IMG/VR virus record: IMGVR_UViG_3300020202_000061
Span: 124,001 to 188,000 of that record
Strand: one strand, 5' to 3'
Length of the DNA: 64,000 nucleotides
Positions 9,544 through 57,820 of this stretch are shown here, in pieces; positions within the stretch are counted from its first letter, which is position 1; the number at the start of each line of letters is the position of its first letter. The notes under the pieces were generated by a model, which worked only from the letters and a program-made list of their open reading frames with translations, ran no database searches and had not been told where the DNA came from. A program made the translations under genes and the position numbers.

Positions 9544-9656
9544 GAAACCCCAGGGTTCGTCCCAGAGCCTGATCGTCTGTCCTAAATATTCCTGATCTTT
9601 TTACGTGGCTTAAGCCGCGCACGGGCCTTGTGCCCGATCAGGAGGAACTGACGGTT

Positions 9657-14366: not shown

Positions 14367-14379
14367 GGAATGAACAGAT

Positions 14380-30534: not shown

Positions 30535-30567
30535 CTGTCCGGGTATTTAGGCGAAAATATTCTTGAA

Positions 30568-32868
30568 CTATTTGCCCTGGATGAACTTCTTCCGGAGAGT
30601 CCGGATGGTGTGGGCGGATTTCGGGTCCTTGAGGAGAGCCGCCAATCCGAAATGCAACGGCTGGGGCCACTCACCCGGATAAACCCAGGTTGAAGTTTCC
30701 GTTTCCCAATCCAGGACGGGTTCGAATTCGTTCTGGACCACAGCTAGGAAATTGTAGTAATGGAATTCACCCCGCTTGAACACATAGAGTGGGATCATCT
30801 GTACCGGACCACGATATCCAGCTTCTTCCTGGACCTCGCGCTGAGCGGCCTCGATGGGGTTTTCACCCCGGTCGATAGCGCCACCCCAGGTCCCCCAAGT
30901 GTGAGGTTGTTCGACATGACCCGTGGTGCGGCCGGGTGGTGGTCGTTTGGAGCGAAACGGCAGTAGGATGCGACCCGTGTCTTTGGCTATTATGATGCAA
31001 CCAGCACCACGGCGACCCCAAAATCCGGTTTGACGGAGTGCTTCACCGTGGTCCTGATCGTCTCTCACAACCTCGCGGAGATTTTGGATGGTCCGTGGAA
31101 TACGTCCGGTCTTCATGAACTGCTGGACACCTACACCCTTGATGTCGTGCCATTTCCCATCTACTACCAAACCGATTTGGGTGATCGGTTGTTCATGGTG
31201 CTTAGCAATCCATTGTGCGGTCAAGGCACCATCTCGGGGACTCGCTGCATCTATGGACAATTGTCCACGGTTATTGAATCCGACACGCACCCATCCCTGA
31301 CTGTTTGCGTATTCCACGACATCATCAGTCCGGGTGAATCCTGGACCTGCTTTCCAGTTAGCACCAAACAATGAGAGATTTTTCAGGAACACGTCGTAAT
31401 GGTGTGAGGCGTCTGGGTCCGCCTCGGGATCACTTAGACCCCAATCCACTGTGAGATGTTGTCCAGTGCTGGGTTTGAACCAGTAGCCTATAGTGTGGAA
31501 TTCGGTGGTTTTGCCCTTGTCGATGATCGGATAGAGTTTACCTATGGGATTGGCGGTTTCCGCAGCCATTCTACGGCCGATGGGTTCACTAGGTTGGATC
31601 ACCCATTCACCCTTGGGAGTCATTACTCCGGGGAAATGACTCGATGAGATGCGCTCGTAATACTGATCCATGAAGTCATCCGGAACCTTGCCGTAGTGCA
31701 GGATCAGAGGGCGGTCAAACGGACCAGCCTTGGACTCCTCGTCCCAGAGTTGGAGGATGCAGATAATCTTTTGAGCCCCACGGAATCCGATAACGTATTC
31801 GGTGCGTAGAGTATGAGCACCTGCTCCACCCTCGGGCTTGTAGGCGGAGGCTTTATAGCGACGGGTGAGCAAATCAATTGCTCTGGCGTAGTTGTCCTCG
31901 GCTACATTCGTTGGCGGTATTTCTGGTTGGTTTTTGATCTTTCTCAGATGATAAGCGATCCCGTAGAGACTTCCGCGAGCAGATTTTTCCATGGCGTGCG
32001 AAATGATACGCATGAGGAAAGCTTCAAACACCATATCGGTGAGCTTTCGATTGAGTGGTCCGGTCCCTTCTAGTAGATCGTGAAGCGATTTGGCGAACAC
32101 CTCTAACATCTGTTCACGATATTGCGGATCATCATAGTAGTACATCGCAGCCACACCATAAGCATCTCTGGCCAAACCAGGATGCACTTTGTGAATCATC
32201 TCGGCGAAAGCACGTGGAATTACATTGGTCTGACTATCCTCATCGGCTAGACCGGCTTGTTCCCGGATCATCGCACACACGATCATCGGGTAGGAGTTGA
32301 ACTTACGCATGGCGCTGGTTGAACTACTCCAGGCGGTCATCATGTTGGTGGACCAATACGATCCGCCAATACTAGCACGGCTTGGAAAGGCTTCACTACC
32401 GGGGTCCTTATCGCGATCCCAATACTTGGCAGGCGGATTCGGCACCACACCATGTGTCATGATCGAACGCAAGGCGTGTGTGGTGGTACCGTGGTACATG
32501 ATGATGGGCTTGCGAAACTGAGCCTCTTTGATCTCGGTGCGACCATGAAATACGTCTTCACTATCGTAGTAGTTCGTATCGACCATGTGGTCTTTGTCTT
32601 TGAAATAGTCCGCGAGCCTAACGGCTTTTGCAGCTTCTTCACGATCCAAGAATTCTCCGGTATCCGTGTAAAATCCCTCGATCACATCATCCCCTAGCAT
32701 GAATTCAAACTCGTCGTAGTCGGTTTCGGGATTCATTCCAAGGTCCTTCATGGCCTGGATCATGGCATCCCGATGAACCGTCTTGGCTTTTCCGATGATG
32801 CGATCCTCTGGTGTGTAAAGGAATGCCACACCTTCGATCTTGGCCTCTAACAGATCGGTCAGCTTCAT
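30568..32868 (-). CDS. Multi-domain putative head-packaged polyprotein: ART-like domain, repeated unknown domain, C-terminal Nudix hydrolase
   Basis: MKLTDLLE start; IMYHGTT; Nudix box GGAIDRGENPIEAAQREVQEEAGY; IKE and LRE at domain boundaries. Confidence 0.7.
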   Translation of the reverse strand: MKLTDLLEAKIEGVAFLYTPEDRIIGKAKTVHRDAMIQAMKDLGMNPETDYDEFEFMLGDDVIEGFYTDTGEFLDREEAAKAVRLADYFKDKDHMVDTNYYDSEDVFHGRTEIKEAQFRKPIIMYHGTTTHALRSIMTHGVVPNPPAKYWDRDKDPGSEAFPSRASIGGSYWSTNMMTAWSSSTSAMRKFNSYPMIVCAMIREQAGLADEDSQTNVIPRAFAEMIHKVHPGLARDAYGVAAMYYYDDPQYREQMLEVFAKSLHDLLEGTGPLNRKLTDMVFEAFLMRIISHAMEKSARGSLYGIAYHLRKIKNQPEIPPTNVAEDNYARAIDLLTRRYKASAYKPEGGAGAHTLRTEYVIGFRGAQKIICILQLWDEESKAGPFDRPLILHYGKVPDDFMDQYYERISSSHFPGVMTPKGEWVIQPSEPIGRRMAAETANPIGKLYPIIDKGKTTEFHTIGYWFKPSTGQHLTVDWGLSDPEADPDASHHYDVFLKNLSLFGANWKAGPGFTRTDDVVEYANSQGWVRVGFNNRGQLSIDAASPRDGALTAQWIAKHHEQPITQIGLVVDGKWHDIKGVGVQQFMKTGRIPRTIQNLREVVRDDQDHGEALRQTGFWGRRGAGCIIIAKDTGRILLPFRSKRPPPGRTTGHVEQPHTWGTWGGAIDRGENPIEAAQREVQEEAGYRGPVQMIPLYVFKRGEFHYYNFLAVVQNEFEPVLDWETETSTWVYPGEWPQPLHFGLAALLKDPKSAHTIRTLRKKFIQGK

Positions 32869-33758
32869 GCCTGATGATCCTCGGCCGCGCCACGAGTTCT
32901 CTGAGTCCTACCCTGGCCTCGGTTCAGAACTTCCTTGGCTCTGATCTTGTCGAGCAGACCCGGTAGGCTGCGCATGAACTGCTGATCATTCCGGGCATTC
33001 TGATTGAATGAGTCATGGGTGAGTTTGACCGGGTCCTTTGAGAGATCAATACCCTCAGGCGTCCGGTTGGAAACCCAAATCAGATAGAGGTCCTTGCCCC
33101 GACGCGGACTCACGAATACAGCCTCACAACGATAGGGATTACCACCCTTGGTCTGCCACACGCGCATAGCCTCGGCCATGTCCTTGAAGATGGAGGAGGC
33201 ACCATACACGGTCAGAGTGTTGCGGAAAAACGCCCCATCGTAGCCCTGAATGGTCCATTCCTCGTTGGTGTGTTTCCCGGCTTTCTCCCACATGGTCTTC
33301 TTGATGAAGTTCATGTCAGTGTAGTCCTGACGGTAGATGTGGGAGGAGTTTGGCATGCCTCCGGAATGTCCAGCCTGAGCCCACCCGGCATTTTGCTCTT
33401 GCCGCTCACGCTCACGGTTCTGCTGCTCACGACGGGCATCCGCAGCACGCCAAAAATCATCCCAGGCTTTCTTCTTGCCGGGATCGGATGGACGACCACC
33501 CGGATAGTTCCAATATTCGGAATTCGGTGTAGTCTCGTTGTGGACTCCATCCTTGATCAATCCGTATGCCTGATTGATTTGTTTGGCCAGAGCCTCGTTG
33601 CCACCGCGATCCGGATGGTTATGGAAGATGATTCTGCGGTAGGCCCGTTTGATATCGGCCGGGGTCTTGCCCTGGGGATCGAAACCCGCGTTGGTGAAAA
33701 CCTCCACGGCTTGAGCCACGGTCATCTCTTTGAGGATACGGAGTTCGTTCAGTTTCAT
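32865..33758 (-). CDS. J-domain (DnaJ-like) protein
   Basis: IKRAYRR..HNHPDRGG....KQINQAY (HPD motif); MKLNEL start. Confidence 0.8.
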   Translation of the reverse strand: MKLNELRILKEMTVAQAVEVFTNAGFDPQGKTPADIKRAYRRIIFHNHPDRGGNEALAKQINQAYGLIKDGVHNETTPNSEYWNYPGGRPSDPGKKKAWDDFWRAADARREQQNRERERQEQNAGWAQAGHSGGMPNSSHIYRQDYTDMNFIKKTMWEKAGKHTNEEWTIQGYDGAFFRNTLTVYGASSIFKDMAEAMRVWQTKGGNPYRCEAVFVSPRRGKDLYLIWVSNRTPEGIDLSKDPVKLTHDSFNQNARNDQQFMRSLPGLLDKIRAKEVLNRGQGRTQRTRGAAEDHQA

Positions 33759-36700
33759 GATAGTGATTTCCTCAGAGCGGTCCCCTCTGGTGTGGTATTG
33801 GTCCAGACCAGCTTCTCCTGGGGAAACTCCTTCTGCAATTCCTTGACCAATGCGGTGCCGATTCCACGACGCTGGAACTCCGGTTCCACCTGTATATAGT
33901 TGATGAAAATTTTCCCCTGATACTGTGTCCAGTTCAGACGACCCGCAACCCGCCTGGGTGGCCAGAGGTCCCCGGCGGTGGAGCGGTCGTAGAAATAGAT
34001 GGTCCCATCGGTCTGACCATGGTGGTGACCGGTCACATCGTTATGGAAGCTATACTGCTGGGGTAGGTCTGCACTTTCCACTACCTGCTTGAGGCTTTCG
34101 TGCTCGGCTTCCTGTTGGGCGATGAACTGCTTCAGTGGCATCTTGGGTAGACCCTGAACCTGTTGGTTCATATTGTGGGACTTCCAGAGTTCTTTCCAAT
34201 GCAACATTCTGGCTTTGGTGAATGGAATCCCATACACGTTGAGACCCTGCTGCTCCATCGCCTTCATTTCGGCATACCGAATCGGAGGCATATCGTGTTC
34301 GGCACGCATGCGATTTCCGATGGCCTCGTGCTGCTCCTCCGCACGTTTCTTCAGGAACATGGCGCGATCTTCAGGAGACCAATAGGTCTGTTTCTGCTCT
34401 CCCTTGAGACGCTCGAAACGACGAACGATGTCCGAGACGATCTGATCCAGACGAGCCGAACCACTGTACTCTTTCACCTCAATATCACCAACTTCCGTAC
34501 GGACATTCACCTCAATCACGTGATTGGTGTGTTTGCGGTCGTACTTGTGAGGCTTCTCCATGGCGGGACGTTGATTATAGTAGTTGTTGGGGCGTTCGAT
34601 CTGGATTTCGATACGACGACCCGCTTTGGTCCAGAGATAGGCCCAGCCCATAAGATTCGAGGTTTCGGTTTTGTCGGTGAGTTTGTCATCCAGGGCGTTC
34701 GCGATCTTCCGGGCAAACTTCCTAATAAACTCCCTGTTATGACCGGGCTGGTTGATGGTCATGTGATCGGCCTCACCACGACCCGGACGTAAATCATAGG
34801 TCTCAATCACTTTGAAGCTGGCGCGGGTCAAGAAGATGATCTGCTCGGGCTCTCGCTCATTGATCGCGCCGGTCCCCTCATCGATTACCGCATCATATCC
34901 AGCCTTCAGCAAGAGTTGAGTTTGTTCCTTGGCCGAGCGCATGGGCCACTTCTTGGTGCCCCAGCCGTCCTCGGTGGTTTCACCCTCGTGGTTGATCTGG
35001 AATGCCCGCATGAACGTGTTTACTGGGGCATACTTGCCGGTCCACTGATAGTTACGCTTGATCCAGCGCAGGTCTTTATCGGATACGTTGAGACCCATCC
35101 GCCACAGCATGTTGCGGACACGACCCCAACCGAGATTGTTCAACTCTTTTAGACGAAGTGGATTCCTCGCAGTGTTCTGGAGCACACGCACGTAGCGGGC
35201 CGCAGCCCCATACCAGATGTCGGCGGGATGCCGCAGCACATACTTCAGAGGGTAACCATAGACTCCCATGGGGTCAGTGTGATTGGGCTTGTCATAGGCG
35301 GAGCGATCCAGCTTGTCGTTCCGGAAATTCCGGAACTGCACGTAGTAGTGCTCCGGATTGATTTCCTTCTTGCGGACCATGTTGCGATACTTGCGATGGA
35401 ACGCCTCGAAGCGCTCCGGGAACATGTCCTGGTAATGGACCTCGTTGAGTTGTCCCTCATTGATGCCGGACCGGAGAAACTTGGTGAGTGCGGCATACCC
35501 GTCCAGGGTGATACCCTTGTGGAACTCTCCTTGTATACCGATGTTGACACGCTCGGTTTCGCGAGGATCGATCATACGCTTGTTCATCAGAGCACGAATC
35601 GTAGCCTGGGCATCCAACATCGTGGGGGCATCGATCATCAGTTTCGAGCCCACGATGGAACCGCGCGTCCAACCATTCTCGTAAGCCTGACGATAACGTT
35701 CCTCATCCATGAGGTCGCCCAGGTCTACCCCTTCAGGGGCTTTGATCCCATACTTGTCAGGTTCCGCAAAGAGCTTCTGCTCGTGATGTGGTTCCGCATA
35801 GATGTCGGCAGTATCATTCAGGAATGGGTGCCACTGTTCGAGCTTACCACTCCTGGCGTGATACCAGAACTTGGTGATATTCGGATTGATGTCGCTTTCA
35901 CTGAGGAACTGACTGATCTCTCCTGGCGACCGATAAAGCATGCTACCTACATCCGCCATATCCACGAGAAGATTATCGATGGTTCTGCGATCAATCAGTT
36001 TTCGACTGATAAGGTAGCGTAAAGTAGCCTGAGCTTCGACTTTGTTGTTGGAATCCAGATAAAGATCACCCCGACTCTTGATAACTCCACGAACCCAACC
36101 ATCCTCGGCGGCCTCCACGGAATAGTCGGCTCCGGTTTTACCTTCCCGATAATCCAGTCCGAACTTGGCGGGATCAGCCATTAAAGCTTCATCATGGTGG
36201 GGTCCGCCTGAATCGACATTACTGAAACGAACGGTCCATGGTACGAACTGCTTGGTTCGAACGTTGAACCAAAACTTGGTCGCAACACGAACCTCCTCAG
36301 TGAGTGATTCGGCCACCTTGCGCTTGAACGGGACGAACAAGGGATTCTCGGATGCGACGGGAGCGACCTTCTTGAACTTGGTGTGACCACCATGTCGAGG
36401 GTTTGGGAATCCCTCATCGTGAACCTGCTCGGGCCAATCGATCTGACCATGCGAGTAGGGCCACAATCCGAGACGCTCCAGGACACGCTTTAGTTTAGAC
36501 CCGGTCAGGATGAAATCACCCTGTTGACGACGATCCGTATAGTAGTCTCCCGACTCGACGCCACCGCCGCCATCCTCATTATCATAATCGTCGGGATCAC
36601 GATGTTTGAAATCGTCCTCGGCATGCTTTAGAACGACTAATGCGCCGTGATTCAGGAATTCTTGCGGGGTGATCGTGCGCTTTCCGAGTTTCGTCGCAAC

Positions 36701-36940
36701 GTGATGGACAATCGCATTCAGGGCTTTGCCAAGCTCGGGCTTATCGGCGGCGAACACCAACGGGTAATAGCCCATCTCTCGGGCATCCGCTTCTCCACCC
36801 AATCCGTACGCGTCCTGGACGAAATCACCCACACGCGGCTCCAATCCCCATCGCTGCACACTGGGATCACGCGCCACATCCAGTGTGGTGCCATGGTAGA
36901 GGGTGCGTGGCATACTCTCGTGCAGGTCGGTCAGCTTCAT
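33755..36940 (-). CDS. Multi-domain putative head-packaged polyprotein: ART-like N-terminus, two copies of an unknown domain, C-terminal GNAT
   Basis: MKLTDLHE start; TLYHGTT; IQVEPEFQRRGIGTALV...TPEG GNAT motif A; LTE, LSE, INE/LNE, VVE at domain boundaries. Confidence 0.7.
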   Translation of the reverse strand: MKLTDLHESMPRTLYHGTTLDVARDPSVQRWGLEPRVGDFVQDAYGLGGEADAREMGYYPLVFAADKPELGKALNAIVHHVATKLGKRTITPQEFLNHGALVVLKHAEDDFKHRDPDDYDNEDGGGGVESGDYYTDRRQQGDFILTGSKLKRVLERLGLWPYSHGQIDWPEQVHDEGFPNPRHGGHTKFKKVAPVASENPLFVPFKRKVAESLTEEVRVATKFWFNVRTKQFVPWTVRFSNVDSGGPHHDEALMADPAKFGLDYREGKTGADYSVEAAEDGWVRGVIKSRGDLYLDSNNKVEAQATLRYLISRKLIDRRTIDNLLVDMADVGSMLYRSPGEISQFLSESDINPNITKFWYHARSGKLEQWHPFLNDTADIYAEPHHEQKLFAEPDKYGIKAPEGVDLGDLMDEERYRQAYENGWTRGSIVGSKLMIDAPTMLDAQATIRALMNKRMIDPRETERVNIGIQGEFHKGITLDGYAALTKFLRSGINEGQLNEVHYQDMFPERFEAFHRKYRNMVRKKEINPEHYYVQFRNFRNDKLDRSAYDKPNHTDPMGVYGYPLKYVLRHPADIWYGAAARYVRVLQNTARNPLRLKELNNLGWGRVRNMLWRMGLNVSDKDLRWIKRNYQWTGKYAPVNTFMRAFQINHEGETTEDGWGTKKWPMRSAKEQTQLLLKAGYDAVIDEGTGAINEREPEQIIFLTRASFKVIETYDLRPGRGEADHMTINQPGHNREFIRKFARKIANALDDKLTDKTETSNLMGWAYLWTKAGRRIEIQIERPNNYYNQRPAMEKPHKYDRKHTNHVIEVNVRTEVGDIEVKEYSGSARLDQIVSDIVRRFERLKGEQKQTYWSPEDRAMFLKKRAEEQHEAIGNRMRAEHDMPPIRYAEMKAMEQQGLNVYGIPFTKARMLHWKELWKSHNMNQQVQGLPKMPLKQFIAQQEAEHESLKQVVESADLPQQYSFHNDVTGHHHGQTDGTIYFYDRSTAGDLWPPRRVAGRLNWTQYQGKIFINYIQVEPEFQRRGIGTALVKELQKEFPQEKLVWTNTTPEGTALRKSLS

Positions 36941-36942
36941 CC

Positions 36943-37479
36943 TTAGCCCCTCGGCGGTACCGGTAGGCGGAACCGCTCCGCACGACGCAGCCAGCCCTTC
37001 AGAAACACCTGCTGTTTCGGATCATTCGCGGCGATCTGCTGGAAGAACTTGATGCGCTCGTCCACGATGGCGTTCTGGAAGTATGGACCCATCGCCTGCT
37101 GGGCGGCAATCGCACGGTCACGGCTTTGCGGACCTAGGATGCCGTCCTGATCGACCGGACCAAACCCTGCGAGGTTGATCACCCTCTGCATGATCCGGAT
37201 CGCCTTACGTGGCCCGTGGTTGATCCGCATGTCCAGGATCAGGGTCATCGGGGGATTCGGCAGGGTGTGGATGCGTGGGTCCGTCAGGTATCGCTTCTCA
37301 TAGATTTCACGAGCCTCACCCTCGGTGAGCTTCTTTACGTCGTCAATCCGGGCCGGACGATGCAACCATTCCCGCAGGGTTTTCTGGGTGATTCCGAAAT
37401 TTGTCGGCCCACCTCTGTCATTGGGATGATTGACATACCCACCCTCATGCCTCAAAACCTCACTGATTGGATCGACCAT
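36943..37479 (-). CDS. Endolysin, glycoside hydrolase family 108 with peptidoglycan-binding domain
   Basis: HEGGYVNHPNDRGGPTNFGIT; DGILGP; Q..FLKGW.RR; TAAATA upstream. Confidence 0.92.
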   Translation of the reverse strand: MVDPISEVLRHEGGYVNHPNDRGGPTNFGITQKTLREWLHRPARIDDVKKLTEGEAREIYEKRYLTDPRIHTLPNPPMTLILDMRINHGPRKAIRIMQRVINLAGFGPVDQDGILGPQSRDRAIAAQQAMGPYFQNAIVDERIKFFQQIAANDPKQQVFLKGWLRRAERFRLPVPPRG

Positions 37480-37668
37480 AGCTGTTTTCTCCCAGATTCC
37501 CAGGTATTTAGGACTCCGGGAGGTTAAAATGAAAACCCGAATACTGTGTGATATGTGTCACGAAAAAAGTATGGTAAACCCCTGATTTGTTTGTTGACAG
37601 GAGAAAAACCCTGGGGTATTCTCTGCTGGCCCACGCTGTGTGGGTAACCGAATGGAGAGCGCAAGCAA

Positions 37669-43662: not shown

Positions 43663-43719
43663 CCCGGCCTGACCCAGGCGTATCTTCCGTAAATACGTGT
43701 GATTTACGGGAGATACACC

Positions 43720-45321
43720 ATGGTAAAAGCTGTCGATATTCTTCGTCTGGTTCTGGAGAACTCCAAGGGGCGGGCTCACGCTCCGGGCGAGGTCAAGACC
43801 CCCAGCTACGACAACATCCACACCCCGGACAACCACAAGCGGAAATCCCGCGAGGTTCGGGCCAAGGGCCTGGGTGATCGTCCCGCACGGAAGAACGTCA
43901 AGCAGACCGAGAAGCCCAAGGGCATGGTCGATAACGGCGGCCCAGCCGCACCGGTCAAGATGAAGGAATCAGACGAGTACGCTTTGCGTGGTATGCCTGG
44001 AAGCACAAGAGAATTTTCTCATAATTTCAATCAAGGAAATTCAAATACTAAATTCTCAGGACCTTCCAAAATCACATACGAGCAGTGGAAGAACACGGTT
44101 AAGAAATTGTGGCCTGCTGCTCAGTTTCGCAAAGATTCCGTTCACGGCGATAGTTTCATTCATGAAGGTAAGCCTATTGCCAACTACAATAGTGGTGGTG
44201 TTTGGGTGAAAAAGCCCGGTTTCGTTGAGGCTCGGACCGCAGGCGCAAAGCGCCGCTACGGTCAGGGTAACAACGAGAATCAGGATGAGAACGCCATCGA
44301 CGATGGTAACGATGATCCGCGTGCGGTCCAGGAGACTCGGGGGAAGGTCGGGAAGCCCTCTACGAAGAAGCACAACCAGACCCAGGATCGGCCGAAGAAG
44401 CCTGCTGTGAAGGTCCAGGAAGGCGTCACCGATGCGGTGGCCGAGTTCCTCATGAAGATGTCCGGCCCCAAGGTGGGTCAGAAGCTCTACGCCGATCTCA
44501 AGACGGAGCGCCCTGATCTCTACCAGCAACTGGTGCAGACGTTCAAGCGCATGGCCGTGGGCACGGGTGGAGTCGGTGTGGTCCACGACGCCACGGCGTT
44601 CAAGAACATGATGAACGATCCCGAAGCGGTACAACTTGCCCGGCAACTGCGTCGGTGGGCAGCGGGTAAGCTCCGCAACAGTCCGGAGATTGTCGCTTGG
44701 CTCCAGCAGAAAGCTGAGAAGCTCAATGCCAAGGGTCTGAGCACGGTCGATCCATTGGGTGGTGACGACGAGGAAGAACTTAGGGATGCTGTGGGTAGCC
44801 CGAGTCAGTACCGTCCCGGCCTGGGTGAGAGCGCTCTGATGGGTCGTGAGACGATCCGTATTGTTTTGAAACTGCTCAATGCGGGTCTGATGAACGCGAT
44901 CTATGATCGGAAGCTCGGCATGGCTGCGCGTCAGATCATGAAGAACCCGAACGATCTCAGCCGGATCGAACCGGCCATGCAGATCATGCAGTTCGTCCGT
45001 AACAACGCCAAGACCCTGTCTCCGGAACTCCAGGCGGTTCTCAATCAGAACGTCATGCCCAAGGTTGCGGAGTCCAGCAAGACCTCCAAGAGCGCACCGG
45101 GCGAGATGCGGAAGCCTGCGGTCAAAACCGATGCCCCGGCCAAGTCCGCGAGCATGCGTTCGGGAAGTCTGACTCCGGAGAAGAAGGTTCCGGTTCGGGA
45201 CAAGAAGCCCGCCCTCAACAAGGATGCGGCCGAATTCGTCCGGGTCAGCGTGAAGAAGGTCGAGGAGGGCGTGAAGGCGCTCGCCGCAATGGGATTTCAG
45301 GTTCAAGGTTTGAAAAAGTAA
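43720..45321 (+). CDS. Late, charged low-complexity protein; putative prohead core/internal head protein
   Basis: TAAATA promoter; many hydrophobic-x-E sites (VLE, MKE, FVE, VQE x2, LGE, VAE, VEE). Confidence 0.55.
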   Translation: MVKAVDILRLVLENSKGRAHAPGEVKTPSYDNIHTPDNHKRKSREVRAKGLGDRPARKNVKQTEKPKGMVDNGGPAAPVKMKESDEYALRGMPGSTREFSHNFNQGNSNTKFSGPSKITYEQWKNTVKKLWPAAQFRKDSVHGDSFIHEGKPIANYNSGGVWVKKPGFVEARTAGAKRRYGQGNNENQDENAIDDGNDDPRAVQETRGKVGKPSTKKHNQTQDRPKKPAVKVQEGVTDAVAEFLMKMSGPKVGQKLYADLKTERPDLYQQLVQTFKRMAVGTGGVGVVHDATAFKNMMNDPEAVQLARQLRRWAAGKLRNSPEIVAWLQQKAEKLNAKGLSTVDPLGGDDEEELRDAVGSPSQYRPGLGESALMGRETIRIVLKLLNAGLMNAIYDRKLGMAARQIMKNPNDLSRIEPAMQIMQFVRNNAKTLSPELQAVLNQNVMPKVAESSKTSKSAPGEMRKPAVKTDAPAKSASMRSGSLTPEKKVPVRDKKPALNKDAAEFVRVSVKKVEEGVKALAAMGFQVQGLKK

Positions 45322-45373: not shown

Positions 45374-46960
45374 ATGGGGAATGCAGGTACTTTTGTCGGA
45401 GCCAAACTCACAGAGGATTGCGCAGATCGCCTGATTGAGTGGATGACCCAGCAGGGTATCCCGAATCCGACTCCCAAAGAGGAGCTTCACTGTACGGTCG
45501 TCTACTCGGAAGAGCGTGAGATCAAGATCACACCGCTCGCCTATGAGCCGCCGCTGGAGATCGATCCGCGATTGTTCAAGTTCAAGCACTTCGGCGAGAA
45601 CCGCGAAGTTCTGGTCCTGGCATTCGACCGGCCTGAACTCGCTTACCGACATAAGCTGCTTCGCGAGAAGTATAAGCTGGGCTGGAAGTTTCCCAGCTAC
45701 ATCCCGCACGTCACTCTGAGTTACAACGCTCCGGAGCACATCGAGGTGTTGCCGGATTTTCCGCTGGTGTTCCAGGGAGAAGAGGTTGGTGGGTTCAATC
45801 CACCGGAGGAGTCTGCTGCGGCCGAGCATCTGGAGAAGAACGAACTCAGTGAGTATTACGAGATCGTCAACGATGAGCCCGTGCGCAAGAAGAAGCGCCC
45901 AGAACCGCCGAAGAAGTTGATCGCGCAGAATCTCATAAAGTTGGGCCTGAAAGAGGATCGTCATCATGAGGACCATCCTCGTGTGCAGGAGCCGGGTCCA
46001 CAACAACTCTCGTATACGAGTTCGATGCGACAGAACGCTGTGGGACAGAAGTGTCAGGTCATCGTGCAGATGCCGGTGCAGGACTTCCTCCGTCTGACCA
46101 CGACGAATGACGCGGATATCGAGACGGTCTTCCGCAAGCAGGCTCATCCGCTGGATTCCTACAATCACTGGAACCGCATGGGCGATGAGCGTGAATACGC
46201 GTCCCAGGTCAATCAGGGCAAGACCTCACAGGATAAAGATTATCAGTGGGGACGGATCGTCGGTCCGTTCTTGCGCATCGACATTGAGCCGCCAGCGGGC
46301 ACCTTCGGTAAGGTCTCCGGCCACGAAGGTCGTCATCGAGCAGCAGCCGTGTGGAACGCCGGAGGTAAAGTGATCCCGGTCGCGTTGTGTCTGCGTCCCT
46401 TCAAGGGAATGTTCCCGAAGAGCTATGGACCCGAATACGAGGCACATCGGGAGCACATCCCGATGGCCGTGCACGGCCAGTTTCGTTCGATCAGTGTGAG
46501 CACGAGGAATTGGAAGGTGATCGAACCAGACCTGCTCAAGCCGTATCGTCGCACGAACGAATCAGTGCTGATGGAGGTCGCAGGCTCGTTCTCGTGGTTT
46601 CATCCTAAGACCGAGCAAGAGGTCACTGCGGAATTCGGAAAGAACGAACACTGGGACCTCGTCAAGGCGAATCCGACGAGGTTTGGCATGACTCGTGCGG
46701 AAGTGAATCAGCCTAATGCGCGGATCGATGATGTCTTCAAACATGGCTGGGTTCGAGTCAACTATTACAGAGGTGTCTGGTACTTTCATGGACAAACCGC
46801 TGCATTGGTGCAGGCCGCAGCCAAGCACTACGCGTGGGCACATGAAGGACTACACGAGGTGATTCTGGATATCGTCGAACCCAACTACAAGTCCTACACC
46901 CTGATGGGTCCGGCCATCGAAAAGTTTCTCAAGCACGGAGTGCTGCCGGAGTGGCGCTAA
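45374..46960 (+). CDS. acb1: Acb1/T4 gp57B-like 2H phosphodiesterase fused to a ParB/Srx-like domain and the repeated unknown domain
   Basis: GTFVGAK...IPNPTPKEELHCTVVYS...LVL.FD..EL..RH...YIPHVTLSY aligns by eye with T4 57B; GHEGRHRAAA ParB-like motif. Confidence 0.8.
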   Translation: MGNAGTFVGAKLTEDCADRLIEWMTQQGIPNPTPKEELHCTVVYSEEREIKITPLAYEPPLEIDPRLFKFKHFGENREVLVLAFDRPELAYRHKLLREKYKLGWKFPSYIPHVTLSYNAPEHIEVLPDFPLVFQGEEVGGFNPPEESAAAEHLEKNELSEYYEIVNDEPVRKKKRPEPPKKLIAQNLIKLGLKEDRHHEDHPRVQEPGPQQLSYTSSMRQNAVGQKCQVIVQMPVQDFLRLTTTNDADIETVFRKQAHPLDSYNHWNRMGDEREYASQVNQGKTSQDKDYQWGRIVGPFLRIDIEPPAGTFGKVSGHEGRHRAAAVWNAGGKVIPVALCLRPFKGMFPKSYGPEYEAHREHIPMAVHGQFRSISVSTRNWKVIEPDLLKPYRRTNESVLMEVAGSFSWFHPKTEQEVTAEFGKNEHWDLVKANPTRFGMTRAEVNQPNARIDDVFKHGWVRVNYYRGVWYFHGQTAALVQAAAKHYAWAHEGLHEVILDIVEPNYKSYTLMGPAIEKFLKHGVLPEWR

Positions 46961-47944: not shown

Positions 47945-49231
47945 TTAGGGTCTAATCCAGCCCCTTGCTAGGGAGTTGACGGTCTGCTTAGCCCCAGCCC
48001 GAACCATAACCTCGCGCAGACGTTCCTTGAACGCGATGTTTTCCCAGCGGTCGGGATAGGTCAGGGTGAACTCACAGAGGGCCTGGATGTAGTCGTTCAG
48101 ACCATCCGGGTTCTTCTGATAATCCTTACCCCCACCAGAGCGATGTTCCAGGTAGCAGTAGGTGTTTATCTTCTCGTACTCGATGCTGCGATTGACGTGG
48201 CGATCCGCATTGGAATCGATCATATCGCAGACAAAACGGAATCCCCTATCGGTGTCGAGATCGTCCAGACAGATGTAATCGTAATTGCACAGACGCTTGA
48301 TCGTGTTCTCAACCTGACTGCGATTGTCCTTGTTGTGCTCATCCAGGCGACCGAACTGCTTCATGAACGAGAGATCATCGAACATCAGACCGATGTAGCA
48401 GGGGGAGTAATCATCACGGGTATAGTCGGGATGAGAGATGTTCACATGAATACCGCAATCATCCTGGGTCAGGAAACTGAATTCCTCCGTGGGCTCATCC
48501 AGAGCACGTAGGATCATCTTCGAATAGACCTGAGAGATCAGAGGATGACACGGAGGAGTGACCAGTTCCAGGCCATTGGCGGTGTGCCAGTTGAGTCCGT
48601 CCAGATCGAGCGATTCCTCTTTCATGTACCAGCCAGGATTTTTCTTGCCTGCCTCCCAATTGATACGGCGGCGACGATTTCCGGTGATGCAACGAGTGAT
48701 TCTCTGACCGATGACCTTTTCGAATTTGTCGGCCGCCGCATTGATCGCGTAGTTCCCGAACAGATGATACTGTTTGTGATCCTCTGCCATGTTGAAAGGG
48801 ATTTTCATGAAGAGCGGGTTCAGCTTCTTCGCGATGTAATCGAGGTCCTGGTTGTTCGCGAGCAGCGCATGAATCTCTTCGGTTCGATCCAGGAACTCCC
48901 CGTTGCGGTAGCGATAGAATTGCGCCCAATCGGGAACTCCTGCCATGGCCATATAACGGCCTGGAGTATTTTGACGGACGGCGGTTTTTTCGTTCACATC
49001 CAGGAAGCGTTTGCCCGAACGATACGAGTCAAACAAGGATAACGCGGACAGACGCGATTTGTACTGATCGTCATCCGAGTTCTTGTCCAGGCCCTGATAG
49101 AGTTTGCTCAATTCATAGGCAGTAAAACTACGCACGCGATGATACCGGCAAATATCCTCAGGGATATTGTCCAGGTTCAAAACCGCGATGAATTCGTATT
49201 CCAGACCTACGCGAAGATCATCGAACGCCAT
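47945..49231 (-). CDS. Putative amidoligase (COOH-NH2 ligase type 2)
   Basis: VGLEYE, LELVTP, CGIHVNIS, LEHRSGGG..Y. Confidence 0.7.
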   Translation of the reverse strand: MAFDDLRVGLEYEFIAVLNLDNIPEDICRYHRVRSFTAYELSKLYQGLDKNSDDDQYKSRLSALSLFDSYRSGKRFLDVNEKTAVRQNTPGRYMAMAGVPDWAQFYRYRNGEFLDRTEEIHALLANNQDLDYIAKKLNPLFMKIPFNMAEDHKQYHLFGNYAINAAADKFEKVIGQRITRCITGNRRRRINWEAGKKNPGWYMKEESLDLDGLNWHTANGLELVTPPCHPLISQVYSKMILRALDEPTEEFSFLTQDDCGIHVNISHPDYTRDDYSPCYIGLMFDDLSFMKQFGRLDEHNKDNRSQVENTIKRLCNYDYICLDDLDTDRGFRFVCDMIDSNADRHVNRSIEYEKINTYCYLEHRSGGGKDYQKNPDGLNDYIQALCEFTLTYPDRWENIAFKERLREVMVRAGAKQTVNSLARGWIRP

Positions 49232-49675: not shown

Positions 49676-50410
49676 CTACCTTTCGAGTTCGGTATCCCAG
49701 TAGAGGTAGTCGCGCCAGGAGTCATGGAGAAACCTGGGCGGATACTTCTTTCCCTTCTCGCGCAGTTCATACGCGGAAGGCTGGTAGGGCGGGCGGATCA
49801 GCCTGAGCGTCACCGGGTTGCCCTTCACATTGACCTTGAGCGTCCCATCCTTATTCAGGACACGGTCGCCTTTGGCCTCGTTCACGTCCTGGTCGGCCAT
49901 GACGATGTTGTCCCAGGAGGTCTTACCCCCACGAGAAGCCGGGTGGACGTGGTCGAACGTCAGTTTGTTCGCCGGGAGTTTCTTCCCGGTGTACTGGCAG
50001 GTGAAGTCGTCACGAAGCAGAATGTTGAACCTCGTGAACGGCACCATCACCGGCAGCGGCACCATTTCGGTGAACGCGACCACACTGGGCAGCGGATACT
50101 TTCCGTTGACCTTGATGTCCTCGTACACGTCCAGGACCGTGATGATGGACTTACCACCGTCTTTCACACGAGAATCACCCTTGGCGATCCAGAAGAAAAT
50201 CTGCGTCCACGGTGCGGTGCTCAGCGGGCAATAGCTCAGAGGCTGATAGTCCGCGTTCAGCAGCAGCGTACGATGCTTGTTCAGCATCGGATTCGCACGA
50301 GCCGCCTCTTCGAAGAATTTGTCTGTCTTGGCGTTCGCGACGAGATCGCCGACTTCCAGGAGTTCCTGGTCGGTGGGCATCTCGAACACGGGTTTCGGCT
50401 TCTCAGACAT
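49676..50410 (-). CDS. HNH endonuclease (alphaproteobacterial McrA-like type)
   Basis: LLLNADYQPLSY, FTRFNILLRD.F.CQY, LTFDHV.P.SRGG..W.N....N..KG, WRDYLYW. Confidence 0.88.
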   Translation of the reverse strand: MSEKPKPVFEMPTDQELLEVGDLVANAKTDKFFEEAARANPMLNKHRTLLLNADYQPLSYCPLSTAPWTQIFFWIAKGDSRVKDGGKSIITVLDVYEDIKVNGKYPLPSVVAFTEMVPLPVMVPFTRFNILLRDDFTCQYTGKKLPANKLTFDHVHPASRGGKTSWDNIVMADQDVNEAKGDRVLNKDGTLKVNVKGNPVTLRLIRPPYQPSAYELREKGKKYPPRFLHDSWRDYLYWDTELER

Positions 50411-56608: not shown

Positions 56609-57820
56609 ATGGCGAAGTTTGAAGTGCCCGTGGTTCGCGTTCGTGCGGTCGAGAAGCATCCGAACGCTGATCGACTCGATATCGTCCGTATCGGCGACTA
56701 CAACTGCATCAGCAACAAGAAAGAGGACGGCACGTCCAGGTATGCGCCGGGCGATCTCGTCGTCTACGTCCCGGAGGGTGCCATCGTTCCAGAGTGGTTG
56801 CTCCGCATGGGCTTCTGGAATGAAAAGACCAACATGGGTCTGCTCGCCGGACCTCAGGGCAATCGCGTGAAGGCGGTGACCCTGCGTGGGGTCATCAGCC
56901 AGGGCATTATGTTTCCGGTCAGCACTGGTGACGTGCAGGGCTTTCCCCTGGGTGATCCCAACATGAACGCGCCCTGGATCAGCGTTGAAGAGGGTCAGAA
57001 CCTCGCGACCGATCTCAACATCATCAAGTATGAGCCGGAGATTCCCGATTGCCTCAAAGGTTCGGTTGCGTCCTGCCACGGATGGACTCTCAAGGGCGAT
57101 CTGGAGAACGTCAAGAAGTTCCCCGACATCCTCCAAGAGGGTGAGGAAGTCGTGATGACCGAGAAGGTTCACGGCGTCTACATGCAGATCGGTTATGTAC
57201 CGAATTTGGAGTTCGAGATCGATGCCGACGAGAGCAATGGGCTCTACAAGGATGGCGATTGGTTCGTCACGTCCAAGGGTCTGGCCGAGGTCGGCATGGT
57301 ATTTCAGTTGAACGAGGAGAACGCTGAGAACCTCTACGTGAAGATGTTTCGCAAGATGAAGGAACGTCTGGAGTGGCTCTACAACGACATGTACGAGAAG
57401 TGGCAACAGACTCAGGATCGTTACTACCCGGAGAATCGCCCGTTCTACCTGATCGGTGAACTTTACGGGCCGGGCGTCCAGGACCTCCACTACAGTTTCC
57501 AGCAGGAGTTCGTCGCCCACGACATCTACATGGGTCAGCCCGGCAACGGTTGGTATCTGGATGAGGATCAGTTCGCCTATCATACCGAAAGGGCTCACAT
57601 CGACCGTGCGCCGGTCCTCTATAAGGGTCCGTTCTCGAAGGGGGTGATGCTCCAGCACACGAGTGGGCCAAGCGTCTTGGCTCTCGGAAAGCACATTCGT
57701 GAGGGACTGGTGGTGAAGCCCATGCAGAACCGCCGAGACGACCGGATCGGTCGCGTCATGCTGAAATCGGTCAGCGACGAATACTTGCTCCGTAAGGGAG
57801 ACGCTACGGAGTACGCATGA
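56609..57820 (+). CDS. RNA ligase, DRB0094/Rnl2-like family with N-terminal OB domain
   Basis: HPNADRL, YVPEG, LRG.ISQG, motif I EKVHG, GELYGPGVQ, REGLVVK, LKSVSDEYL. Confidence 0.9.
   Translation: MAKFEVPVVRVRAVEKHPNADRLDIVRIGDYNCISNKKEDGTSRYAPGDLVVYVPEGAIVPEWLLRMGFWNEKTNMGLLAGPQGNRVKAVTLRGVISQGIMFPVSTGDVQGFPLGDPNMNAPWISVEEGQNLATDLNIIKYEPEIPDCLKGSVASCHGWTLKGDLENVKKFPDILQEGEEVVMTEKVHGVYMQIGYVPNLEFEIDADESNGLYKDGDWFVTSKGLAEVGMVFQLNEENAENLYVKMFRKMKERLEWLYNDMYEKWQQTQDRYYPENRPFYLIGELYGPGVQDLHYSFQQEFVAHDIYMGQPGNGWYLDEDQFAYHTERAHIDRAPVLYKGPFSKGVMLQHTSGPSVLALGKHIREGLVVKPMQNRRDDRIGRVMLKSVSDEYLLRKGDATEYA

What the first reader, a model, noticed from the sequence alone, without database searches (positions are those of the whole stretch)
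45374..46960. Acb1-like anti-CBASS nuclease as the N-terminal module of a three-domain fusion
Seen: both 2H motifs (HCT, HVT) with gp57B-like flanks, then a linker with LSE and LKE sites, a ParB/Srx-like GHEGRHR domain, an LME site and the repeated domain; downstream of a late-promoter gene. Established: T4 Acb1 is a small stand-alone enzyme that degrades cyclic nucleotide signals. Inference: here it may be virion-delivered or co-processed with other counter-defence modules.
Basis: partly seen in the sequence, partly recalled or inferred. Interest (0 to 1): 0.65.

Follow-up and report, generated by a model that had tools for sequence, protein, structure and literature searches.

The report
Acb1 fused into a jumbo-phage polyvalent protein
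A soil jumbo phage related to T4 fuses an Acb1-type enzyme, which destroys bacterial cyclic-nucleotide alarm signals, to two unannotated domains in one late-promoter gene, a new variant of the known phage "polyvalent protein" theme, and it may be cut up and carried in the phage head.

Summary
Window 45374..46960 (+) is one 528-aa ORF.

- **Residues 1-~146: Acb1.** Pfam PF23474, 79.6 bits against a cut-off of 27. Both HxT motifs are present, and it matches the Acb1 crystal sequence at E 1e-12.
- **Residues 206-394: an unannotated family.** The confident model matches only ParB/Srx-fold structures, weakly (Z up to 4.2). It carries an invariant HEGRHR-AAA arginine motif.
- **Residues 395-528: a second unannotated domain ("GWVR").** It has no fold match. 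It recurs in NUDIX- and GNAT-bearing multidomain proteins of the same genome.

Only three full-length relatives exist, all metagenomic. The two C-terminal domains have no match in 50,697 deposited phage genomes. In metagenomes they are shuffled with Acb1, GNAT, ART-PolyVal and other domains, which is the polyvalent-protein pattern of Iyer et al. 2017.

The genome is a 347-kb T4-like jumbo phage with a gp21-type prohead protease. A T4-like late-promoter motif precedes the two-gene operon. An [LIVM]-x-E motif, the gp21 cleavage motif, sits just before both C-terminal domains across their families.

Enzyme activity, head packaging and cleavage are inferred, not shown. Verdict: a real feature and a new variant of a known kind.

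The parts
43687..43696 (+). Late-promoter-like motif CCGTAAATAC, inside a palindrome (43687-43709), 23 nt upstream of the ATG of the first gene of the operon.
   Evidence: [CG]TAAATA[CT] 7-mers are 15-18 times enriched within 80 nt upstream of starts. There are 70 copies against 37 expected; copies lie before the PAAR gene and upstream of the head operon.
43720..45321 (+). Upstream gene, 533 aa, rich in K/A/G/V, no family match. Its N-terminus MVKAVDILRLVLE|NSK resembles a capsid-targeting leader. It is syntenic in a related phage, where it starts MKVSHFLSLVME|NSK.
45374..46960 (+). The 528-aa fusion ORF (P0001) including its stop. No promoter-like motif and no plus-strand terminator lies in the 52-nt gap before it, so it is probably co-transcribed with the upstream gene.
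45374..45811 (+). Acb1-type 2H phosphodiesterase domain, residues 1 to about 146. It carries H39-C-T41 and H112-V-T114, F7 aligned to the base-stacking Tyr, and invariant E136. The C-terminal lid is divergent.
   Evidence: Pfam PF23474 at 79.6 bits; PHROG 755; PDB 7t26 at E 9.8e-13; alignment A4.
45854..45949 (+). Conserved basic linker module, residues 161-192 (YYEIVNDEPVRKKKRPEPPKKLIAQNLIKLGL), followed by LKE (192-194) and VQE (204-206). The same module sits at the extreme C-terminus of the syntenic ortholog P0005.
45989..46555 (+). Middle domain, residues 206-394. A divergent ParB/Srx-like fold with invariant HEGRHR (317-322, 46322-46339) at a strand-to-helix junction. It is an unannotated family.
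   Evidence: No Pfam hit. More than 100 homologs. Model pLDDT 93. Every structural match with Z of 2 or more is ParB/Srx fold, best Osa 4ovb at Z 4.2, rmsd 5.9, 122 aligned.
46568..46576 (+). LME (residues 399-401) within VLME|VAG, at the junction between the middle and C-terminal domains. It is a family-wide [LIVM]-x-E-[AV]-x-G motif and lies in the low-confidence N-terminal tail of the model.
   Evidence: The major capsid protein has VLME|NAS at the expected propeptide position.
46556..46957 (+). C-terminal 'GWVR' alpha/beta domain, residues 395-528 (GWVR at 458-461). No Pfam family and no convincing fold match. It is repeated in paralogous multidomain proteins.
33758..36940 (-). Paralogous polyvalent protein, 1061 aa. 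It has the leader MKLTDLHE|S, two GWVR-domain copies (35465-35851 and 35900-36205) and a C-terminal GNAT domain. It lies in a late-promoter operon that starts at 37511.
30571..32868 (-). Paralogous polyvalent protein, 766 aa. It has the leader MKLTDLLE|A, a weak GWVR-like copy (31090-31407) and a C-terminal NUDIX domain (30661-31014).

Best explanation
This is a polyvalent counter-defence protein behind a late-type promoter in a T4-like jumbo phage from soil.

Shown:
- The N-terminal module is a member of the Acb1 family of 2H phosphodiesterases, with the full HxT/HxT catalytic tetrad.
- The middle module is a new family with a ParB/Srx-like fold and an invariant arginine motif.
- The C-terminal module is a new domain that the phage re-uses in other multidomain proteins carrying NUDIX and GNAT enzymes.
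- A gp21-type protease gene is in the genome.
- A late-type promoter motif precedes the operon.
- [LIVM]-x-E motifs are conserved at the domain junctions.

Inferred mechanism:
- The Acb1 module cleaves the 3'-5' bonds of CBASS-type cyclic di- and trinucleotide signals, so the host effector is never switched on.
- The ParB/Srx-like module binds or hydrolyses a nucleotide, or nicks DNA, as a second independent activity against the host.
- The protein is made late together with the upstream leader-bearing protein.
- I consider it moderately likely (about 0.4) that it enters the prohead, is cut by the S77 prohead protease at LKE194 and/or LME401, and is injected with the DNA in the next infection.
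For: Acb1 identity:
- PF23474 at E 2.6e-22 and 79.6 bits, against 17 bits for the generic 2H family; no LigT hit.
- Acb1 structure 7t26 at E 9.8e-13; no other 2H enzyme at E up to 1 except an Acb1-like domain on the Pam3 portal and another Acb1.
- H39, T41, H112, T114 and E136 are invariant in alignment A4. They match the tetrad and the adenine-contacting Glu described in PMC9117128.

The fusion is real:
- Three homologs from other metagenomes have the same architecture.
- The DNA is held by two soil studies.

Polyvalent nature:
- The middle and C-terminal domains occur alone or inside proteins of 500 to 3650 aa.
- They are fused there to Acb1 (5 of 35), GNAT (5), DUF5661 (4), ART-PolyVal (3), PcfJ, TopoI and LigT.
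- Acb1 plus the middle domain recurs in P0005, P0010 and P0031, the last in reversed order. Acb1 plus the C-terminal domain recurs in P0039.
- The syntenic ortholog P0005 carries different modules.
- In another jumbo phage, Acb1 and a protein carrying the middle domain are separate ORFs of one gene row.
- PMC5512222 section 20 already predicted that 2H domains of polyvalent proteins degrade nucleotide signals.

ParB/Srx.

Packaging and processing:
- Peptidase_S77 and a gp23-type capsid protein are in the genome.
- All 5 large viral records that carry the middle domain have S77.
- Late-type promoter motif.
- [LIVM]xE[AVIGS] lies just before the middle domain in 43 of 92 homologs and before the C-terminal domain in 14 of 20, against 10-13 % expected.
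- Stand-alone members start with leaders such as MKLWE|ITG and MRLKQILRE|VAG. These are like the T4-type internal-protein leader MKTYQEFITE|A.
- At least 10 proteins of this genome start M[KR]L..[DE]L..E.
- The capsid protein has VLME|NAS.
- The gp21 preference for I/LxE is stated in PMC12991175.
Against: - No activity, expression or virion data exist; no RNA run holds the stretch.
- The protein lacks an N-terminal targeting leader; it starts directly in the Acb1 core.
- The in-genome paralog at 216922-218010 starts its GWVR domain without the motif.
- [LI]xE is not enriched in the protein overall, and LSE is not conserved.
- The Acb1 C-terminal lid with its Trp is not clearly present; the Pfam match ends at model position 130 of 144. 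Substrate range may therefore differ from T4 Acb1.
- The ParB/Srx assignment rests on low Z scores (4.2 or less) and no sequence-family hit.
- The stand-alone Acb1 of phage G was not found in that phage's proteomic data (PMC12484599).
Confidence: 0.6

Rival explanations
1. The same enzyme works as an unprocessed cytoplasmic protein and is never packaged. Late expression simply matches the moment when CBASS is triggered: T4-type prohead proteases activate CD-NTases late in infection. The [LIVM]-x-E elements are structural caps of the domains, or leftovers of the leaders of once-separate genes.
For: - A 2026 preprint (PMC12991175) shows that gp21 activates CBASS from about 14 min, and that T4 needs Acb1 and Acb2 to mask this.
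- The protein has no N-terminal leader.
- The motif travels with both domains even in stand-alone proteins, as expected for part of a fold.
- One paralog lacks it.
- Phage G Acb1 is absent from that phage's proteomic data.
Against: - The seven residues up to and including LME have pLDDT under 50 in the model, yet they are conserved in sequence.
- The same LMEAGAG motif recurs in the paralog at a junction that is not followed by a GWVR domain.
- Stand-alone members carry 8-20 residue leaders that resemble the T4 targeting sequence.
- The upstream gene of the operon has such a leader.
Confidence: 0.3
2. The N-terminal 2H domain is an RNA-end-healing or 2',3'-cyclic phosphodiesterase of the LigT type. 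It works in RNA repair with the phage RNA ligase, not against cyclic-nucleotide immunity.
For: - PHROG 755 is labelled 'RNA ligase'.
- There is a weak hit to 2_5_RNA_ligase2 (E 0.006).
- An RNA ligase gene lies in the window at 56609-57817.
Against: - The Acb1 model scores 79.6 bits against 17 bits for the generic 2H family; there is no LigT_PEase hit.
- The best solved relative is Acb1 itself.
- The RNA ligase is 10 kb away, behind other genes.
- The PHROG label is the old automatic name of T4 gp57B, which was later shown to be Acb1.
- Iyer et al. never saw polyvalent-type 2H domains next to RNA ligases.
Confidence: 0.06
3. The fusion is an assembly or gene-calling artefact that joins separate genes.
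For: The sequence comes from a metagenome. In one related phage, Acb1 and the protein with the middle domain are separate ORFs.
Against: - The frame is uninterrupted.
- Three independent metagenomic homologs at 76-78 % identity keep the same continuous architecture, two of them with an extra DUF5661 insert.
- A second soil study holds 83 % of the words.
- Other architectures with Acb1 and the middle domain exist.
Confidence: 0.02

Closest known systems
T4 Acb1 (gp57B) and Erwinia phage FBB1 Acb1 (PDB 7T26/7T27)
   Same: - Same Pfam family.
- HxT/HxT catalytic tetrad, aromatic residue at the position of the base-stacking Tyr, and conserved Glu after the second motif.
- Encoded by a T4-related phage.
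- In a T4-like phage the Acb1 gene lies directly upstream of internal-head-protein genes.
   Different: - Known Acb1 proteins are stand-alone enzymes of about 150 aa. This one is the first quarter of a 528-aa protein.
- About 30-35 % identity.
- The C-terminal lid region is divergent (F141-N-P-P instead of the lid Trp context).
- It sits behind a late-type promoter.
Polyvalent proteins of phages and conjugative elements (Iyer, Burroughs, Anand, de Souza, Aravind 2017, PMC5512222)
   Same: - Several effector-type domains in one polypeptide of a phage.
- Domains are shuffled in many orders.
- 2H domains and ParB/Srx domains are both listed components.
- The 2H domains were predicted to destroy nucleotide signals, and the proteins to be injected.
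- Relatives here carry ART-PolyVal, GNAT and PcfJ.
   Different: - The ParB/Srx-like and GWVR domains here match none of the Pfam families built from that work (no ddrB-ParB and no LPD hit).
- There is no MuF, portal or metallopeptidase domain.
- The junctions carry a T4-protease-type motif, which that paper does not describe.
T4 internal proteins (IPI-III) and Alt: head-packaged, gp21-processed, injected counter-defence proteins
   Same: - T4-type prohead protease and capsid protein are present.
- Late promoter motif.
- I/LxE motifs.
- Paralogs and the operon partner have leaders like MKTYQEFITE|A.
- The cargo is counter-defence enzymes.
   Different: - The target has no N-terminal leader.
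- The candidate sites are internal, so the protein would behave as a small polyprotein.
- Nothing is known about its presence in virions.
Osa / PFIN, sulfiredoxin, SerK and ParB N-terminal domains (ParB/Srx fold)
   Same: - The only structural neighbours of the middle domain.
- Strand, Arg-rich motif, then helix, as in the ParB GERRxRAA box.
- One family member hits PFIN weakly (E 0.085).
   Different: - Z of only 2-4.2, and no sequence-profile match to PF02195 or to any solved ParB.
- Extra beta elements after residue 345.
- No HTH domain and no ParA partner.
Cyanophage Pam3 portal protein (PDB 8HDS) with a C-terminal Acb1-like domain
   Same: An Acb1-like 2H domain with both HxT/S motifs, fused to another phage protein, in that case a virion protein.
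   Different: The match is weak (E 1.3e-3). The domain is at the C-terminus of a portal protein, and no ParB/Srx or GWVR domain is present.

Membership tests
Acb1 (PF23474, anti-CBASS 2H phosphodiesterase) | Sequence match above the curated family threshold, and better than to other 2H families | tested here: met
   79.6 bits against a cut-off of 27. 2_5_RNA_ligase2 scores 17 bits, below its cut-off. No LigT_PEase hit. Best PDB match is Acb1 7t26 at E 9.8e-13.
Acb1 (PF23474, anti-CBASS 2H phosphodiesterase) | HxT/HxT catalytic tetrad (H44, T46, H113, T115 in the numbering of PMC9117128) | tested here: met
   H39-C-T41 and H112-V-T114, invariant in alignment A4.
Acb1 (PF23474, anti-CBASS 2H phosphodiesterase) | Base-contacting residues: stacking aromatics and the adenine-specific Glu | tested here: inconclusive
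   F7 aligns with the N-terminal Tyr. F107 and Y110 (KFPSY) align with aromatic residues ahead of the second motif. E136 is invariant. Exact equivalence to W74 and F107 could not be fixed without a structure.
Acb1 (PF23474, anti-CBASS 2H phosphodiesterase) | C-terminal lid with a Trp that closes over the ligand | tested here: inconclusive
   The Pfam match stops at model position 130 of 144. The sequence continues GEEVGGFNPPEE. MAFFT pairs LSEYY with the lid, but that segment belongs to a separate mobile linker module.
Acb1 (PF23474, anti-CBASS 2H phosphodiesterase) | Cleavage of 3'3'-cGAMP, cA3 and related signals, and rescue of the phage from CBASS | not testable with these tools
   Needs biochemistry and phage genetics.
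ParB/Srx superfamily | ParB/Srx alpha+beta core fold | tested here: inconclusive
   Model pLDDT 93. All 7 matches (wide search) and all 26 entries (second look) with Z of 2 or more are ParB/Srx proteins. The best Z is only 4.2 (4ovb, rmsd 5.9, 122 aligned) and Foldseek E is 0.3 or worse.
ParB/Srx superfamily | Conserved Arg motif in the nucleotide pocket (ParB box II GERRxRAA type; from established knowledge) | tested here: met
   H-E-G-R-H-R-A-A-A at residues 317-325, at the junction of strand 112-119 and helix 121-129 of the model. H, G, R and R are invariant in 57 sequences.
ParB/Srx superfamily | Match to an annotated ParB family (PF02195, ddrB-ParB, Parb-CE) | tested here: not met
   No hit for the domain or for 57 family members at E up to 0.1; one PFIN hit at 0.085. 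No PDB sequence-profile hit. Only language-model neighbours are labelled ParB.
Polyvalent proteins (Iyer et al. 2017) | Two or more conflict-type domains in one polypeptide of a phage or plasmid, drawn from a shared shuffled domain network | tested here: met
   Three domains here. Relatives combine them with Acb1, GNAT, ART-PolyVal, DUF5661, PcfJ, TopoI and LigT in varying order.
Polyvalent proteins (Iyer et al. 2017) | Delivered into the host with the DNA (packaged in the capsid) | not testable with these tools
   Only circumstantial: late-type promoter motif, S77 protease, I/LxE junctions.
T4-type head internal proteins (capsid-targeting leader plus gp21 site) | N-terminal leader of about 10 residues ending in I/L-x-E | tested here: not met
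   The target starts MGNAGTFVGAK inside the Acb1 core. The operon partner and at least 10 other proteins of the genome do have such leaders.
T4-type head internal proteins (capsid-targeting leader plus gp21 site) | A gp21-family protease encoded by the phage, and I/LxE sites in exposed segments | tested here: met
   PF03420 at 81 bits at genome 67324-67755. LKE194 and VQE206 lie in the linker. LME401 lies in a stretch of low pLDDT.

The most novel reading that the evidence does not exclude
T4-like jumbo phages package a modular arsenal of injected counter-defence enzymes. Each module (Acb1, ParB/Srx-like, GWVR, NUDIX, GNAT, amidoligase) would be preceded by a short leader or junction ending in [LIVM]-x-E. 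This 528-aa protein would then be a small polyprotein that the prohead protease cuts inside the head into separate effectors. The cyclic-nucleotide-degrading enzyme would be in the cell from the first second of the next infection. The same protease that trips CBASS would thus also arm the phage's anti-CBASS cargo.
Probability: 0.3. Interest if true: 0.8.

Novelty: new variant of a known kind. Interest (0 to 1): 0.55.

Why it matters
Acb1 is known only as a small free enzyme. Here it is hard-wired to two domain families that no database names, in phages that no one has cultured.

If the protein is packaged and cut at its I/LxE junctions, a phage could inject an anti-CBASS enzyme instead of waiting to express it. 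The prohead protease, recently reported as a trigger of CBASS, would also mature the countermeasure.

Independently of that, the work defines two new domain families with clear conserved motifs:
- a ParB/Srx-like family with HEGRHR, with more than 100 cluster representatives at 50 % identity;
- a "GWVR" domain.

It also gives a sequence signature, a leader or junction ending in [LIVM]-x-E-[AV]. This could be used to predict head-cargo proteins in T4-like jumbo phages.

Tried and rejected
- **Exact T4 late promoter.** TATAAATA is absent from the window. It was replaced by the enriched variant found by k-mer analysis.
- **LSE as a processing site.** Rejected: it is not conserved in the closest homologs.
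- **Alignment of LSEYY to the Acb1 lid.** Rejected as unreliable, because YYEIVNDxPV belongs to a mobile linker module that sits at the C-terminus of P0005.
- **Overall enrichment of [LI]xE in the protein.** Not significant.
- **Pfam and PHROG scans of residues 141-528 and of stand-alone homologs.** Nothing.
- **PDB sequence-profile search with the middle-domain alignment.** Only chance-level CdaA hits.
- **Fold searches for the C-terminal domain.** PDB by Foldseek, the wide VIA search and BFVD gave no convincing match. Scattered weak PD-(D/E)XK and gelsolin-like hits (Z up to 4.4, E 5e-3 or worse) were judged non-specific.
- **Atlas.** The structure library was unavailable. The feature search for the C-terminal domain gave nothing.
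- **Deposited phage genomes.** No DNA match for the locus and no protein match for residues 200-528.
- **RNA evidence.** No RNA run holds the stretch.
- **Frameshift fusion with the upstream gene.** There is an A-run GAAAAAG before its stop, and the target is in the +1 frame here and in L006. A -1 shift ends after 17 codons, and no evidence supports a +1 shift. Not pursued.
- **Papers on fused or packaged Acb1.** Searches found none in the library.
Full report
**1. What is in the sequence**

The window is bases 124001-188000 of a 347,504-bp viral record. It comes from soil metagenomes, and two studies hold the stretch.

At 45374..46960 (+) there is a single ORF of 528 codons. Its ATG is confirmed by three metagenomic homologs of 76-78 % identity that all start MGNAGTF. 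The ORF follows a 533-aa gene (43720..45321) after a 52-nt gap. The gap has no promoter-like motif and no plus-strand terminator. The ORF ends head-to-head with a DUF7217 gene and a PAAR gene on the other strand.

**2. N-terminal module: Acb1**

- Residues 5-134 match Pfam Acb1 (PF23474) at E 2.6e-22 and 79.6 bits, against a cut-off of 27.
- The generic 2H family scores only 17 bits, and LigT does not appear.
- tblastn finds the gp57B genes of 569 deposited phages, always with the N-terminal quarter only.
- The best solved relative is Acb1 itself (7t26, E 9.8e-13).
- H39-C-T41 and H112-V-T114 correspond to the HxT/HxT tetrad that PMC9117128 shows to be catalytic.
- F7 aligns with the N-terminal base-stacking Tyr, and E136 is invariant.

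The C-terminal lid is not clearly recognisable: the Pfam match ends at position 130 of 144. I therefore file the module as a member of the Acb1 family, with the caveat that its substrate range may differ.

**3. Middle module: a new family with a ParB/Srx-like fold**

- Residues 141-528 have no Pfam or PHROG match.
- An exhaustive profile-free search found 156 cluster representatives.
- Residues about 206-394 form one mobile domain. It occurs alone in proteins of 150-200 aa, or inside proteins of 500-2300 aa.
- In an alignment of 57 members, P, H, G, R and R are invariant around HEGRHR-AAA.
- AlphaFold gives a confident model (pLDDT 93).
- Foldseek's top rows are ParB, Noc, Osa and sulfiredoxin, but with E of 0.3 or worse.
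- In a search of 48,161 representative chains, the only seven matches with Z of 2 or more are Osa, two sulfiredoxins, SerK, KorB, SbnI and Atu1540.
- In the second look, all 26 entries with Z of 2 or more belong to the same superfamily.
- The best match is Osa 4ovb, at Z 4.2, rmsd 5.9 and 122 residues aligned.
- The arginine motif sits at a strand-to-helix junction. From established knowledge, ParB box II (GERRxRAA) sits in the same kind of position.

The Z values are low, and no member hits an annotated ParB family. The honest statement is therefore "ParB/Srx-like fold and motif, new sequence family". It works like a nucleotide-binding ParB/Srx domain, but membership in any named family is not shown.

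**4. C-terminal module: a repeated domain of unknown fold**

- Residues 395-528 form a second mobile domain. It occurs alone in proteins of 130-160 aa, or inside giants of up to 3650 aa.
- Conserved positions include AG, DH, FG, GWVRxN, Y and D.
- The model is confident (pLDDT 90.8) but has no convincing neighbour in the PDB or BFVD.

With a family profile against all 2695 ORFs of the genome, the domain is found in:

| Location | E-value | Note |
|---|---|---|
| genome 216922-218010 | 1.8e-13 | paralog outside the window |
| window 33758-36940 (1061-aa GNAT protein) | 5.2e-9 | two copies |
| genome 11597-12976 | 3.4e-4 | |
| window 30571-32868 (766-aa NUDIX protein) | 2.7e-3 | |

**5. It is a polyvalent protein**

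- Of 35 long proteins that carry either C-terminal domain, 5 also carry Acb1, 5 GNAT, 4 DUF5661, 4 DUF6934 and 3 ART-PolyVal. Single ones carry PcfJ, topoisomerase I or LigT.
- Acb1 plus the middle domain recurs in P0005, P0010 and P0031, the last with the order reversed. Acb1 plus the C-terminal domain recurs in P0039.
- P0005 is the positional ortholog in a related phage. It has the same upstream gene, DUF7217 and a 428-aa neighbour, but different internal and C-terminal modules.
- The basic linker module of our protein (residues 161-192) sits at the very end of P0005.
- In another jumbo phage, Acb1 is a separate ORF at the head of a gene row whose fourth ORF ends in the middle domain.

This shuffling is what Iyer et al. 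2017 defined as polyvalent proteins. That paper already lists 2H and ParB/Srx domains among the components. It proposes that such 2H domains degrade the nucleotides of nucleotide-activated defence systems (PMC5512222).

None of the 50,697 deposited phage genomes has a match to residues 200-528.

**6. Timing and possible packaging**

*T4-type head machinery.* The genome encodes a gp23-type capsid protein and a Peptidase_S77 (gp21-type) prohead protease. All five large viral records that carry the middle domain also have S77.

*Promoter.* Exact TATAAATA is absent. The 7-mers CCTAAAT, CTAAATA, GTAAATA and TAAATAC are 14-18 times enriched within 80 nt upstream of starts. Copies lie:
- 23 nt before the upstream gene's ATG (43687-43696);
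- directly before the PAAR gene (47948, -);
- about 0.8 kb upstream of the prohead-protease ORF, as a TTAAATAT variant (genome 68649, -), which I take as the head operon's promoter by analogy with the T4 gene order;
- before the operon that holds a GH108 lysozyme, the GNAT protein, a DnaJ-like protein and the NUDIX protein (37511, -);
- before the GWVR paralog (genome 217968, -).

I read this motif as the phage's late promoter, by analogy with T4.

*The Glu motif.*
- A motif [LIVM]-x-E-[AVIGS] lies immediately N-terminal to the middle domain in 43 of 92 homologs. It lies N-terminal to the C-terminal domain in 14 of 20.
- The background expectation is 10-13 %, giving binomial P of about 1e-19 and 1e-8. 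The sequences are under 50 % identical but are not phylogenetically independent.
- In stand-alone proteins it forms a short N-terminal leader, for example MKLWE|ITGRLRTT, MRIDE|ITG, MRLKQILRE|VAGTY and MRERAPLFE|VAGTF.
- In fusions it sits at the junction. In our protein this is VLME|VAG at residues 398-404, in the part of the model with pLDDT under 50.
- T4 gp21 cleaves after Glu in I/LxE motifs (PMC12991175; PMC5694885).
- T4-type internal head proteins start MKTYQEFITE|A.
- At least ten proteins of this genome start M[KR]L..[DE]L..E followed by A, S or G. They include the NUDIX and GNAT proteins and an amidoligase protein.
- The upstream gene of our operon starts MVKAVDILRLVLE|NSK, and its ortholog starts MKVSHFLSLVME|NSK.
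- The capsid protein has VLME|NAS about 24 residues before the conserved IIRRVLPN...GVQPM block, which is where T4 gp23 is cut according to my own knowledge.

*What speaks against packaging.*
- The target has no N-terminal leader.
- One paralog lacks the motif.
- The motif might be part of the fold.
- [LI]xE is not enriched in the protein as a whole.
- LSE is not conserved.

*An alternative reason for late expression.* A 2026 preprint shows that the T4 prohead protease itself activates CBASS late in infection. A late cytoplasmic Acb1 would be useful without any packaging.

**7. Verdict**

| Claim | Confidence |
|---|---|
| Observation | confirmed |
| Three-domain interpretation | supported |
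| The protein is an Acb1-family enzyme embedded in a polyvalent protein | about 0.85 |
| It is head-packaged and cut at LKE194, VQE206 or LME401 | about 0.4 |
| The composite best explanation (Acb1-family polyvalent counter-defence protein made late, packaging left open) | 0.6 |

This is a new variant of a known kind. The kind (polyvalent proteins with 2H and ParB/Srx domains) was described in 2017, and Acb1 in 2022. What I did not find described:
- this architecture;
- the two unannotated domain families;
- the protease-type junction motif;
- the link to a leader-bearing protein set in T4-like jumbo phages.

This rests on the papers I could search.

Noticed in passing
G000 genome-wide; in the window 30568-32868 (-) and 33755-36940 (-): At least ten proteins start with a shared leader M[KR]L..[DE]L..E followed by A, S or G (MKLTDLLE|A, MKLIDLLLE|S, MRLLDFLTE|S and others). 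This resembles the T4 internal-protein capsid-targeting sequence. Several continue with a WI..G....H hairpin like the start of the GWVR domain. One of them (genome 34600-36537) carries an Amidoligase_2 domain.
   Followed up: partly
window 29366-37511 (-): A gene row behind a late-promoter motif. In order: GH108 lysozyme with PG_binding_3 (36946-37479), the 1061-aa GNAT polyvalent protein, a DnaJ-like 297-aa protein, and the 766-aa NUDIX polyvalent protein. A second motif at 30550 precedes a holin-like protein (30004-30534). A third motif at 29369 sits at the 3' end of a tail-protein-like ORF (29369-30004).
   Followed up: partly
G000 genome-wide, e.g. window 2609, 5293, 9582, 24640, 37511, 43689, 47948: The motif [CGT]TAAATA[CT] occurs 70 times against 37 expected, mostly 10-35 nt before a start codon. 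Several copies directly precede tRNA genes (genome 201459, 251184, 268684, 271211). TTGACA-containing words are also about 6 times enriched upstream of genes and may be early promoters.
   Followed up: partly
window 43687-43709: The promoter motif of the operon lies inside a perfect 8-bp inverted repeat, CCGTAAAT-ACGTGTG-ATTTACGG. This could be a regulatory hairpin or a binding site.
   Followed up: no
window 45310-45321 and L006 6364-6376: The upstream gene ends in an A-run (GAAAAAG) just before its stop, and the Acb1 fusion is in the +1 frame in both phages. A -1 shift would end after 17 codons. There is no evidence for recoding, but the arrangement is conserved.
   Followed up: partly
window 9630-19770 (+): Two very large ORFs (1578 and 1796 aa) lie in a stretch of raised GC (0.58-0.62 against about 0.55) and strong GC skew. 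They carry repeated matches to PHROGs 2803 and 25721 of unknown function. The next two ORFs (710 and 704 aa) carry the same repeat.
   Followed up: no
window 47945-49231 (-): A 428-aa protein next to the PAAR gene has no Pfam or PHROG match. It is conserved as a neighbour of the Acb1 fusion in the related phage (L006 10687-11973).
   Followed up: no
window 49679-50410 (-), 56609-59228 (+): HNH endonuclease genes lie at 49679-50410 and 57817-58329. The second sits between an RNA ligase gene (56609-57817) and a DNA methyltransferase gene (58329-59228).
   Followed up: no
L016 386-6576 (IMG/VR record of 375,937 bp): In this related jumbo phage a stand-alone Acb1 ORF (155 aa) heads a row of four ORFs. 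The last one (834 aa) ends in the ParB/Srx-like domain. The pair that is fused in the window is linked by neighbourhood here.
   Followed up: partly
P0002 and P0004 (metagenomic homologs), residues about 155-220: Two of the three close homologs have a DUF5661 domain (PF18905) inserted between the Acb1 core and the basic linker module. This marks that point as a tolerated insertion site.
   Followed up: partly
PDB 8hds (Pam3 portal protein), residues 482-595: The portal protein of cyanophage Pam3 carries a C-terminal domain that aligns with the Acb1 module, including both HxT/S motifs (E 1.3e-3). This is an independent case of an Acb1-like domain attached to a virion protein.
   Followed up: no
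L012 (Logan contig, 17.5 kb): A stand-alone GWVR-domain gene (P0034) lies 4.7 kb upstream of a Gp23-family gene and about 7 kb upstream of a Tad2-like (anti-Thoeris sponge family) gene.
   Followed up: no
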